Positions 51,592 through 53,827 of a stretch of DNA of 64,000 nt are shown one piece after another. The notes below the pieces were generated by a model that worked only from the letters and a program-made list of their open reading frames with translations, did not search any database and had not been told where the DNA came from. A program made the position numbers and the translations under genes. Numbering within the stretch: the stretch's first letter is position 1; each line of letters opens with the position of its first letter. The stretch spans positions 248,001 to 312,000 of the forward strand of contig JAHLTZ010000012.1 of assembly GCA_025786725.1 (NCBI GenBank), read 5' to 3'. Origin of the DNA: Syncephalis fuscata S228. Taxonomy: Eukaryota; Fungi; Zoopagomycota.

Positions 51592-53827
51592 CTATAGGAA
51601 CACTTGCGCAATGGACAGTGCTTCCAAACAAGGCACAAGCATAATGCTACTAACAAAATAAAATAAAATACCAAAAGCAATACTAATAGGTAATGCAGGC
51701 AATGCTTTTCTCCTAATAGCGAGCAAAAAGATGGTAGCATTAAGTCCCTAGCATAATAAAACAATATATTAGCATAAAATACAGCACTGATATACAAATA
51801 ACTTACCATCATAACCGCTACTGTACATGCCACGGTAGTTATCCAATCAAGCATAGCTAGTACCACACATAAAGTAATTAGATAATGTTACAACTTAATA
51901 CTATTAATACTATAGATGCAACTTACCAGCACGTGCAATAAGCACACTATAAAAAACAAAGTCACCTAAACCAAGCTTAATACCTGCTTCTTCAACTAGA
52001 TTAAGCCAAACAAATATAGTATTAGTATCTATATCCGTAGTCATTATCCTTATTCTTCATACTTACCCTCTTCGTCTATCTCTTCATTCTCCATTGGTTC
52101 ATTTCTTCCAGGTCGCGATGAATTACGTACAGAGCCCGATGTCGATTGACACAGTGGATGAGGTGTGTGATTGGACATTCCTTGGGCGGATGACATGGCT
52201 GGTTCCTTGCTCCAAGCCATATCCACACGTGACTCCATAGCAATATGTTCTACATGACTGTCCATGGCACTGGGTAAATGTGGAGAAGCAATAGCATAGT
52301 TGGGCACGGCTGTATGCGTGGACTGATAATCAGTCTCGGACACATAGTCGCGTTCATTAAAGGCCATCAGCCATACAGCATTAACTAGAAGTGGTTTAGT
52401 TTACACGTCACTATAATATACTAGTGATGGCTGCTTACCTGCATACAATAAAGCCGGCACCGGTTTAGATTGGTTCTTGGTGCTTTCGATCAACATCTTC
52501 AATGGACCAAATGGACACAAAACGGCAATCAAATCTAGAATGATATTGGTCAGCTAAATGTTCATTGCAATAGGCTATATACTAATCTACTTACCCCAAA
52601 TGGCCAATAGACCAAGTAGAAGCCAAGTAGTCCATTCAGCCAGACCCGTCAATGAGAAAGCCTTTATAATGACAGTGGTAATAACAATCAATATAGCTTT
52701 AATAAACTATTAGTCATTTGCTATTAAGCTTACCATTAATGATGACATGATAGTCAAATAAGCTTGTTGAACCCGAATTGGCCCTTTAGACCACATTACC
52801 ATGACAACACCGACCACTGCAAAGTTATAAAGACCAAAGGACAGCGTAAAATAGTCCATAGGAATAGAAAGCACATCAAGAATACTCATTTCAAGCAGCA
52901 ATCCCATACCGCCTAGCAACAAAGCAACTACCACCATAAAAAAGCCAAATAATATCTTAAAACAGCCATATTTGTATAGTACGAATATAACAATAGTCAT
53001 AACAATAATCTGACTTAGAATAATAGCAGCATTCGCTAAAGAACCAAAAAACCGGCTTGTTCCAGATGTAGCATTTGCTTCTGTATAAACTTGACCAGCT
53101 GATCCAGCAGGCCTAGCATTAGTATTATTAATTAAGTTCATTAGTTAATTAGCTAGCAACTATTCCTAAATGCTTACTTATAGTTACTAAGTATAGACAG
53201 TTTTACCCATAAAATCGATAACAATACACAGCCGAGTACAGGTTTAACAATTAAATAAATCTGTTTTACGTAAAAGCGCAATTCATCGGCCTTTTCTTCC
53301 TGCGTCATTTCATCCTCGTCTTCTTCGCCATTGGGCTGAAGAATGGTAGATTCACGCAGCTGTGTTTGATGTACACTGTTACGGCGTTGATTAATAACTT
53401 GTGCGGCACTGTAACGACTCATAGGACGGGATCGCACCGTCTCAATGTCGGACAGGGTGGCCATATCCGTATCGTAGCCACCCGTAAAGTTGTGCTTTTC
53501 ATTGTTTATACCACAAACCGTTTGATGGGTCGGCCAGTCTTGTGTTTGACATGATTCTGAGCAGTATTTGACGGATGGACCGCATCGAGCACACATAAAA
53601 TTGGCCGACTTGCCACAAAGTGCACAATAAGCCGAGTCATTGAGATCCACTATATGGAGAAATACACACACACACACAAATATTAATATAGAACCGCAAG
53701 TCTTGGCAATAAATTAAATACAGATACCGCACTTACCCTCTTCTGTGGCCATTGGTTCTGCTTGGTCTATCAGACGATCACTAGAGTCGTAAGTTCGAGA
53801 TGAGTCCGGCCGAATATGCCGTGGCAT
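51592..53827 (-). CDS. Presenilin (A22A intramembrane aspartyl protease) with N-terminal MYND zinc finger
   Basis: VLYKYGCFK; QQAYLTIMSSLM; EWTTWLLLGLLAIWDLIAVLCPFGPL; KLGLGDFVFYSVLIARA; KALPALPISIAFG; CALC..CARC..YCSESCQTQDWPTHQTVC lies in the same exon as TM1. Confidence 0.95.

What the first reader, a model, noticed from the sequence alone, without database searches (positions are those of the whole stretch)
53174..53650. MYND zinc finger fused to the cytosolic N-terminus of presenilin
Seen: one uninterrupted exon encodes C-x2-C-x7-C-x2-C-x6-C-x3-C-x7-H-x3-C (53626-53513) and then presenilin TM1 (ELRFYVKQIYLIVKPVLGCVLLSILW), so the fusion is not a gene-model artefact. Both catalytic Asp motifs and PALP are intact. 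Established: animal and plant presenilins have an unstructured N-terminus, MYND fingers bind PxLxP-type motifs, and presenilin is absent from yeasts and most Dikarya. Inference: a fungal gamma-secretase-like protease with a built-in protein-interaction module, possibly recruiting substrates or releasing signalling fragments.
Basis: partly seen in the sequence, partly recalled or inferred. Interest (0 to 1): 0.8.

Follow-up and report, generated by a model that had tools for sequence, protein, structure and literature searches.

The report
Fungal presenilin with MYND zinc finger
The membrane protease behind Notch signalling and Alzheimer amyloid carries, in most early-diverging fungi but in none of the other eukaryotes sampled, an extra zinc-finger docking domain, which gives a ready handle for finding what this protease does in organisms without Notch or APP.

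Summary
The window is Syncephalis fuscata. One exon (53649-53178, minus strand) encodes a complete MYND finger, a 76-residue linker and presenilin TM1, inside an intact nine-exon presenilin gene with both catalytic aspartates and PALP. [quoted passage not shown] The fusion is not peculiar to this species: 88 of 119 fungal/aphelid presenilins retrieved carry it, and four of eight 'MYND-less' models checked have the finger just upstream, missed by gene callers. All MYND-bearing presenilins fall in one aphelid+fungi clade; Fonticula and the animal, oomycete and red-algal sequences sampled lack it. This fits one gain on the fungal stem and about three losses. The three peptide-binding residues of characterised MYND domains (Tyr, Gln, Trp) are invariant, so it is probably a tethered docking site for a proline-rich motif; the partner is unknown. 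Release of the finger as a signal is unlikely. Fungal gamma-secretase is already published, and the MYND co-annotation sits in one supplementary table (17 of 58 members), but I found no paper discussing it. Transcript data for this species could not be obtained. The scan had no earlier presenilin finding. New variant of a known kind.

The parts
53737..53827 (-). Coding exon 1 (likely start ATG 53827; alternative ATG 53752); short N-terminal peptide
   Evidence: GT donor at 53736, phase 1 fits exon 2; peptide upstream of Met 53752 conserved in Thamnocephalis and L013
53178..53649 (-). Exon 2: MYND finger + linker + TM1, one open frame
   Evidence: same exon content in L013 and Thamnocephalis L020
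53513..53626 (-). zf-MYND domain (residues 39-76 of the 565-aa model); peptide-binding Tyr59, Gln65, Trp69
   Evidence: Pfam PF01753 E 3.4e-10; invariant columns; equivalents of BS69 Y540/Q546/W550 (PMC4742278)
53381..53419 (-). Conserved short linker motif around AAQVIN, function unknown
   Evidence: found in 10 of 41 non-redundant MYND-bearing homologs from Zoopago-, Mucoro- and Chytridiomycota, 1 of 45 outgroup rows; conserved island
53201..53284 (-). Presenilin TM1
   Evidence: 89-96% identical in Zoopagales orthologs; Pro-Val column shared with animal presenilins; helix in model
52734..53112 (-). Exon 3: loop 1 and TM2-TM5
   Evidence: Pfam PF01080 E 9.4e-32
52595..52661 (-). Exon 4: TM6 up to the first base of the catalytic Asp codon
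52439..52534 (-). Exon 5: rest of catalytic Asp337 (WD motif) and start of the cytosolic loop
   Evidence: PF01080 E 2.5e-9
52067..52384 (-). Exon 6: hydrophobic loop segment and large variable cytosolic loop
   Evidence: open in phase; identical to S. fuscata protein P0201
51927..51995 (-). Exon 7: TM7 with GLGD (catalytic Asp486 at 51963-51961)
   Evidence: PF01080 E 9.9e-10
51807..51856 (-). Exon 8: TM8
51592..51747 (-). Exon 9: PALP (51699-51688), TM9, C-terminus and stop
   Evidence: PF01080 E 6.2e-14

Best explanation
The gene is the single, intact presenilin of Syncephalis fuscata and the catalytic subunit of a complete four-part gamma-secretase. A MYND finger was joined to the cytosolic N-terminus once, on the stem of aphelids plus fungi, and has been kept in most lineages that kept the complex. 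It hangs on a flexible linker from the N-terminal fragment and docks a proline-rich motif of a cytosolic partner through its conserved Tyr/Gln/Trp surface, bringing that partner to the protease. Shown: fusion, motifs, cofactors, distribution, conserved binding surface, independent folding in a model. Inferred: zinc binding, proteolytic activity, peptide binding. My preferred partner class (about 0.35 on its own) is the cytosolic tail of a membrane substrate or of the upstream sheddase, so that the finger adds substrate selection from the cytosolic side.
For: Fusion within one exon. Cofactors: nicastrin E 1e-18, APH-1 E 4e-12, PEN-2 E 1.5e-19. 88 of 119 fungal/aphelid rows carry the finger; hidden fingers in 4 of 8 loci checked. 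One clade, SH-aLRT 98, four state changes against 20.6 in shuffles; sister group with Fonticula lacks it. MYND 74-84% identical against 36-61% for the linker among Zoopagales. Tyr, Gln, Trp invariant in 28 of 28 diverse fingers; these are the binding residues in BS69, ETO and DEAF-1 (PMC4742278, PMC3555993). Model of the Basidiobolus ortholog: finger pLDDT above 90, linker below 50, core matches human PSEN1 with TM-score 0.89 by target. An ADAM-like gene with a proline-rich cytosolic tail and two CSL genes are in the genome.
Against: No ligand identified. No PxLxP or PPPL motif is conserved in fungal presenilins (7 of 41, against 4 of 16 in finger-less fungal rows) or present in the nicastrin and APH-1 tails; the ADAM tail motif is only a near match. 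Tyr, Gln and Trp are conserved in most MYND domains, so they show a working surface, not which ligand. The beta-1 strand (A-x-F-M) differs from DEAF-1/ETO, so specificity may differ. Monoblepharids, some aphelids and a probable gut-fungus lineage keep presenilin without the finger, so it is not essential.
Confidence: 0.6

Rival explanations
1. The finger serves a non-proteolytic, scaffolding role: it docks a trafficking or vacuolar/lysosomal factor, and presenilin acts as in Dictyostelium, where catalytically dead protein rescues endocytic and autophagy defects.
For: PMC6613883 shows protease-independent lysosomal and autophagy roles for the complex in an organism without Notch. No substrate is known in fungi. 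Flexible tether fits scaffolding.
Against: Both aspartates, GLGD and PALP are conserved across the fungal set, which argues for selected catalysis; Dictyostelium manages this role without a reported finger. Not exclusive with the best explanation.
Confidence: 0.3
2. The finger links presenilin to chaperone or ubiquitin machinery for assembly or turnover of the complex, as MYND adaptors such as yeast Mub1 (Ubr2 ligase), ZMYND10 and PHD2 (HSP90 co-chaperones) do (recalled from memory, not tested here).
For: MYND domains are general adaptors with differing specificities (PMC3555993). The genome holds MSS51-like and other stand-alone MYND proteins.
Against: The presenilin finger profile is closest to DEAF-1 and ETO among solved structures (E 1.5e-10, 1.7e-8), above ZMYND10 (4.5e-7); with 40 residues this ranking is weak.
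Confidence: 0.2
3. The finger is cut off and travels, e.g. to the nucleus, as a signalling fragment.
For: Many characterised MYND ligands are nuclear co-repressors; the linker is long and disordered; CSL genes exist.
Against: Presenilin self-cleavage lies between TM6 and TM7 and cannot free the N-terminus; linker length (10-160 aa) and sequence are not conserved and show no shared cleavage site.
Confidence: 0.05
4. The fusion is a neutral passenger or a gene-model artefact.
For: At least three lineages lost it; many public models omit it.
Against: Same exon as TM1; retained across five major lineages; far better conserved than its linker; omissions were annotation errors in 4 of 8 loci; an uninterrupted 557-aa finger+presenilin frame in four sequencing-run contigs of a mucoralean fungus.
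Confidence: 0.03

Closest known systems
Human presenilin 1/2 (peptidase family A22A, Pfam PF01080) in gamma-secretase
   Same: WD/YD in TM6, GLGD in TM7, PALP, nine-helix fold (TM-score 0.89 by target, 28% identity for the Basidiobolus model), large TM6-TM7 loop, nicastrin/APH-1/PEN-2 in the genome
   Different: Folded MYND domain in the cytosolic N-terminus; different TM1 signature (fungal F-Y-x-x-Q-I-Y); no Notch or APP substrate known; activity untested
Gamma-secretase of non-Dikarya fungi (Merenyi et al. 2023, PMC10406608)
   Same: This gene is a member; the paper reports loss only in Dikarya, Olpidium and Rozella-Microsporidia
   Different: The main text never mentions MYND; only a supplementary table lists IPR002893 on 17 of 58 members of the presenilin cluster. 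Stem origin, losses and mis-annotation are shown here
MYND domains of DEAF-1, ETO/MTG8 and BS69/ZMYND11 (PF01753)
   Same: Eight zinc ligands with the cross-brace spacing; Tyr/Gln/Trp peptide-binding residues; best solved-structure matches
   Different: Attached to a membrane protease instead of a nuclear regulator; beta-1 strand consensus A-x-F-M; ligand unknown
Dictyostelium PsenA/B and plant presenilins
   Same: Complete complex in organisms without Notch; proteolytic and non-proteolytic roles proposed (PMC6613883, PMC3788181)
   Different: No finger was seen on any non-fungal presenilin retrieved; these particular proteins were not individually identified in my set

Membership tests
Presenilin (A22A) | Pfam PF01080 above cut-off | tested here: met
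   exon by exon: 110.7, 36.8, 38.2, 52.0 bits against 34.3
Presenilin (A22A) | Y/WD aspartate in TM6 and GxGD aspartate in TM7 | tested here: met
   same in S. fuscata protein P0201; columns over 90% conserved
Presenilin (A22A) | PAL motif before TM9 | tested here: met
   51699-51688
Presenilin (A22A) | Nine-TM presenilin fold, closer to PSEN than to SPP/SPPL | tested here: met
   model of the Basidiobolus ortholog (not the window protein): PSEN1 E 7e-16 against SPPL2a 0.07
Gamma-secretase complex | Nicastrin, APH-1 and PEN-2 encoded in the same genome | tested here: met
Gamma-secretase complex | Assembly, endoproteolysis to NTF/CTF and intramembrane cleavage of type I stubs | not testable with these tools
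   needs biochemistry
zf-MYND (PF01753) | C4-C2HC ligand pattern and Pfam score | tested here: met
   40.2 bits against 22.7, profile 1-39; zf-HIT not reached
zf-MYND (PF01753) | Conserved Tyr/Gln/Trp ligand-binding surface | tested here: met
   invariant in alignment A4; reference residues from PMC4742278
zf-MYND (PF01753) | Binds two zinc ions and a PxLxP/PPPLI-type peptide | not testable with these tools
   no conserved such motif found in presenilin, nicastrin or APH-1 tails; binding needs experiment

The most novel reading that the evidence does not exclude
Fungal gamma-secretase selects substrates (or couples to its sheddase) from the cytosolic side through a built-in MYND finger reading proline-rich tails - a sequence-specific targeting module that animal gamma-secretase lacks - and so defines an unknown intramembrane-proteolysis signalling route acquired on the fungal stem and lost in Dikarya.
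Probability: 0.3. Interest if true: 0.85.

Novelty: new variant of a known kind. Interest (0 to 1): 0.6.

Why it matters
What gamma-secretase does in eukaryotes without Notch or APP is open, and fungi were long said to lack it. A small soluble domain, conserved across chytrids, blastoclads, zygomycetes, arbuscular mycorrhizal fungi and aphelids, is a ready bait for finding partners or substrates, and Mucor lusitanicus and Rhizopus microsporus carry it and are (from general knowledge) genetically tractable. It is also a candidate shared derived character of aphelids plus fungi, and shows a systematic annotation error: public models, including that of S. fuscata itself, often start inside or after the finger.

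Tried and rejected
The spliced model was searched exon by exon by reference; the joined protein was never assembled or sent to a search, and full-length work used database proteins (P0007, P0040, P0201). Metagenome scan with exon 2 found nothing; word search with exon 2 found one fragment only because of the length limit; Atlas gave only generic MYND clusters below 0.9. Paper searches for presenilin with MYND/zf-MYND and fungi found none relevant. A second presenilin on C246 was rejected (23 bits, below cut-off, low-complexity). Two nicastrin genes rejected: 99.6% identical over 6.9 kb. An internal PxLxP ligand rejected. 'Species-specific fusion' rejected. Three Pfam calls failed on frame slips (and 89) and were corrected or dropped. 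Kickxellomycotina, Entomophthoromycotina, named Neocallimastigomycota, other nucleariids and unicellular holozoans were not identified in the retrieved set, so their state is untested.

Full report
Observation. On the minus strand the window holds the stated Cys/His pattern at 53626-53513. Pfam zf-MYND covers its whole profile at 40.2 bits (cut-off 22.7, E 3.4e-10). The frame runs on without stop through a 76-residue linker into a hydrophobic helix (53284-53201) and ends at a GT donor at 53177. Nine exons with GT-AG introns and consistent phases give one frame with a single terminal stop; exons 3, 5, 7 and 9 each pass the Pfam Presenilin cut-off alone. The first catalytic aspartate (WD) is split by intron 4, the second lies in GLGD, and PALP precedes the last helix.

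Organism and gene model. Exons 3-9 and the last 139 residues of exon 2 are identical to protein P0201, named Syncephalis fuscata by NCBI. That public model (517 aa) starts at a Met inside the finger and loses its first two cysteines. The peptide upstream of Met 53752 is conserved in Thamnocephalis and in a metagenome ortholog, so ATG 53827 (565 aa) is the likelier start. Neighbouring genes are conserved as well: an ATG10-like gene upstream in the metagenome ortholog and an acetyltransferase upstream in Thamnocephalis.

The complex. The genome has one presenilin, nicastrin (two loci 99.6% identical), APH-1 and PEN-2. Merenyi et al. [quoted passage not shown]

Distribution. A profile of exon 3 against 1.84 billion representatives and searches with the Basidiobolus and Fonticula proteins retrieved about 330 presenilins. 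Of the 119 fungal or aphelid rows, 88 carry the finger (Pfam's precomputed domains agree for most): Mucorales, Umbelopsis, Mortierellales, Glomeromycotina, Calcarisporiella, Basidiobolus, Syncephalis, Blastocladiales, several chytrid orders and the aphelid Amoeboaphelidium protococcarum. Of eight finger-less models whose DNA I read, four (Thamnocephalis, Powellomyces, Bifiguratus, a metagenome contig) have a full finger (53-56 bits) just upstream of the called start; four (Gonapodya, Hyaloraphidium, Amoeboaphelidium occidentale, an aphelid-like contig) have none within 2.5 kb. Fonticula alba and a related contig have none within 3 kb.

Tree. In a 104-row FastTree all 41 finger-bearing rows lie in one clade of 57 (support 96) and none of 45 outgroup rows has the finger. 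A 63-row IQ-TREE run (LG+C20, quick search, SH-aLRT only) gives an aphelid+fungi clade at 98, sister to a Fonticula group at 97, with four state changes against 20.6 for shuffled labels. The simplest reading is one gain on the aphelid+fungi stem and losses in monoblepharids, some aphelids and an asparagine-rich lineage that is probably Neocallimastigomycota (name not verified). Limits: one named nucleariid, an outgroup that was not monophyletic, unicellular holozoans not identified, and rows chosen by similarity to fungal queries.

Is the finger functional? Among Zoopagales it is 74-84% identical against 36-61% for the linker. In 28 diverse fingers Tyr, Gln and Trp are invariant besides the zinc ligands, and the beta-1 strand has a conserved A-x-F-M. 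These three residues are the ones that bind proline-rich peptides in BS69, ETO and DEAF-1 (PMC4742278, PMC3555993). An AlphaFold model of the Basidiobolus ortholog shows a confident finger (pLDDT above 90), a disordered linker and a core that superposes on human PSEN1 (TM-score 0.89 by target). The linker varies from 10 to 160 residues (median 74), which fits a flexible tether and not a fixed contact with the core.

Mechanism. Shown: fusion, intact catalytic motifs, cofactors, conservation. Inferred: a working gamma-secretase whose N-terminal fragment carries a cytosolic docking site for a proline-rich motif. The ligand is not inside presenilin, nicastrin or APH-1, so it is probably an outside partner. 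I favour the cytosolic tail of a substrate or sheddase (about 0.35); the genome has an ADAM-like gene whose short tail is proline-rich with a near-match motif, a lead only. A trafficking or vacuolar scaffold role (about 0.3) follows the protease-independent functions shown in Dictyostelium (PMC6613883). A chaperone or ubiquitin adaptor role (about 0.2) rests on recalled MYND examples. Release of the finger (0.05) lacks a route, because self-cleavage is between TM6 and TM7 (PMC3788181).

Transcripts. Four consecutive sequencing runs of a mucoralean fungus yield short contigs with an uninterrupted 557-aa finger+presenilin frame, which is what spliced mRNA would give, but I could not confirm the library type.

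Novelty. No searchable paper holds presenilin with zf-MYND, or with MYND and fungi; other hits were unrelated. The co-annotation is present, uncommented, in the supplement of PMC10406608 (17 of 58 cluster members) and in automatic database annotation. Most subscription papers are outside the library, so a passing mention elsewhere is possible. The scan's notes held no presenilin finding.

Verdict. Real, ancient, widespread and apparently undiscussed: a new variant of a known kind.

Noticed in passing
window:53381-53419 (-): Short motif around AAQVIN conserved in an otherwise divergent linker across Zoopagales, Mucoromycota and some chytrids; unexplained, possibly a binding helix.
   Followed up: partly
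window:53737-53827 (-): N-terminal peptide with S-x-x-R-L-I/V conserved in three Zoopagales; resembles an acidic dileucine sorting signal in one ortholog only.
   Followed up: no
L035 (G000:C90:417500-421500): ADAM-like disintegrin gene ending in a TM helix and a short proline-rich cytosolic tail with a near match to MYND ligands.
   Followed up: partly
G000:C290:100875-101294 and C305:105663-106157: Two CSL/LAG1 DNA-binding genes in the genome.
   Followed up: no
L016 and L017 (G000:C54, C179): Nicastrin region present twice at 99.6% identity over 6.9 kb: allelic or assembly duplicate.
   Followed up: yes
window:54560-56245: ATG10-like gene (-) and NAA50-like acetyltransferase (+) upstream of presenilin; order partly kept in L013 and Thamnocephalis L020, where a GH18 gene lies downstream instead.
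   Followed up: partly
P0201, L020, L023, L025, L029: Public gene models often start inside or after the MYND finger, so database counts understate the fusion.
   Followed up: yes
P0047, P0250 (Batrachochytrium salamandrivorans); P0192 (Rhizophagus irregularis): Models with HEAT/ARM repeats or a PF06094 domain in front of the finger; probably merged neighbouring genes.
   Followed up: no
L030 (G000:C361:299200-302400): MSS51-like MYND protein; four more stand-alone MYND genes in the genome, none an obvious donor of the presenilin finger.
   Followed up: partly
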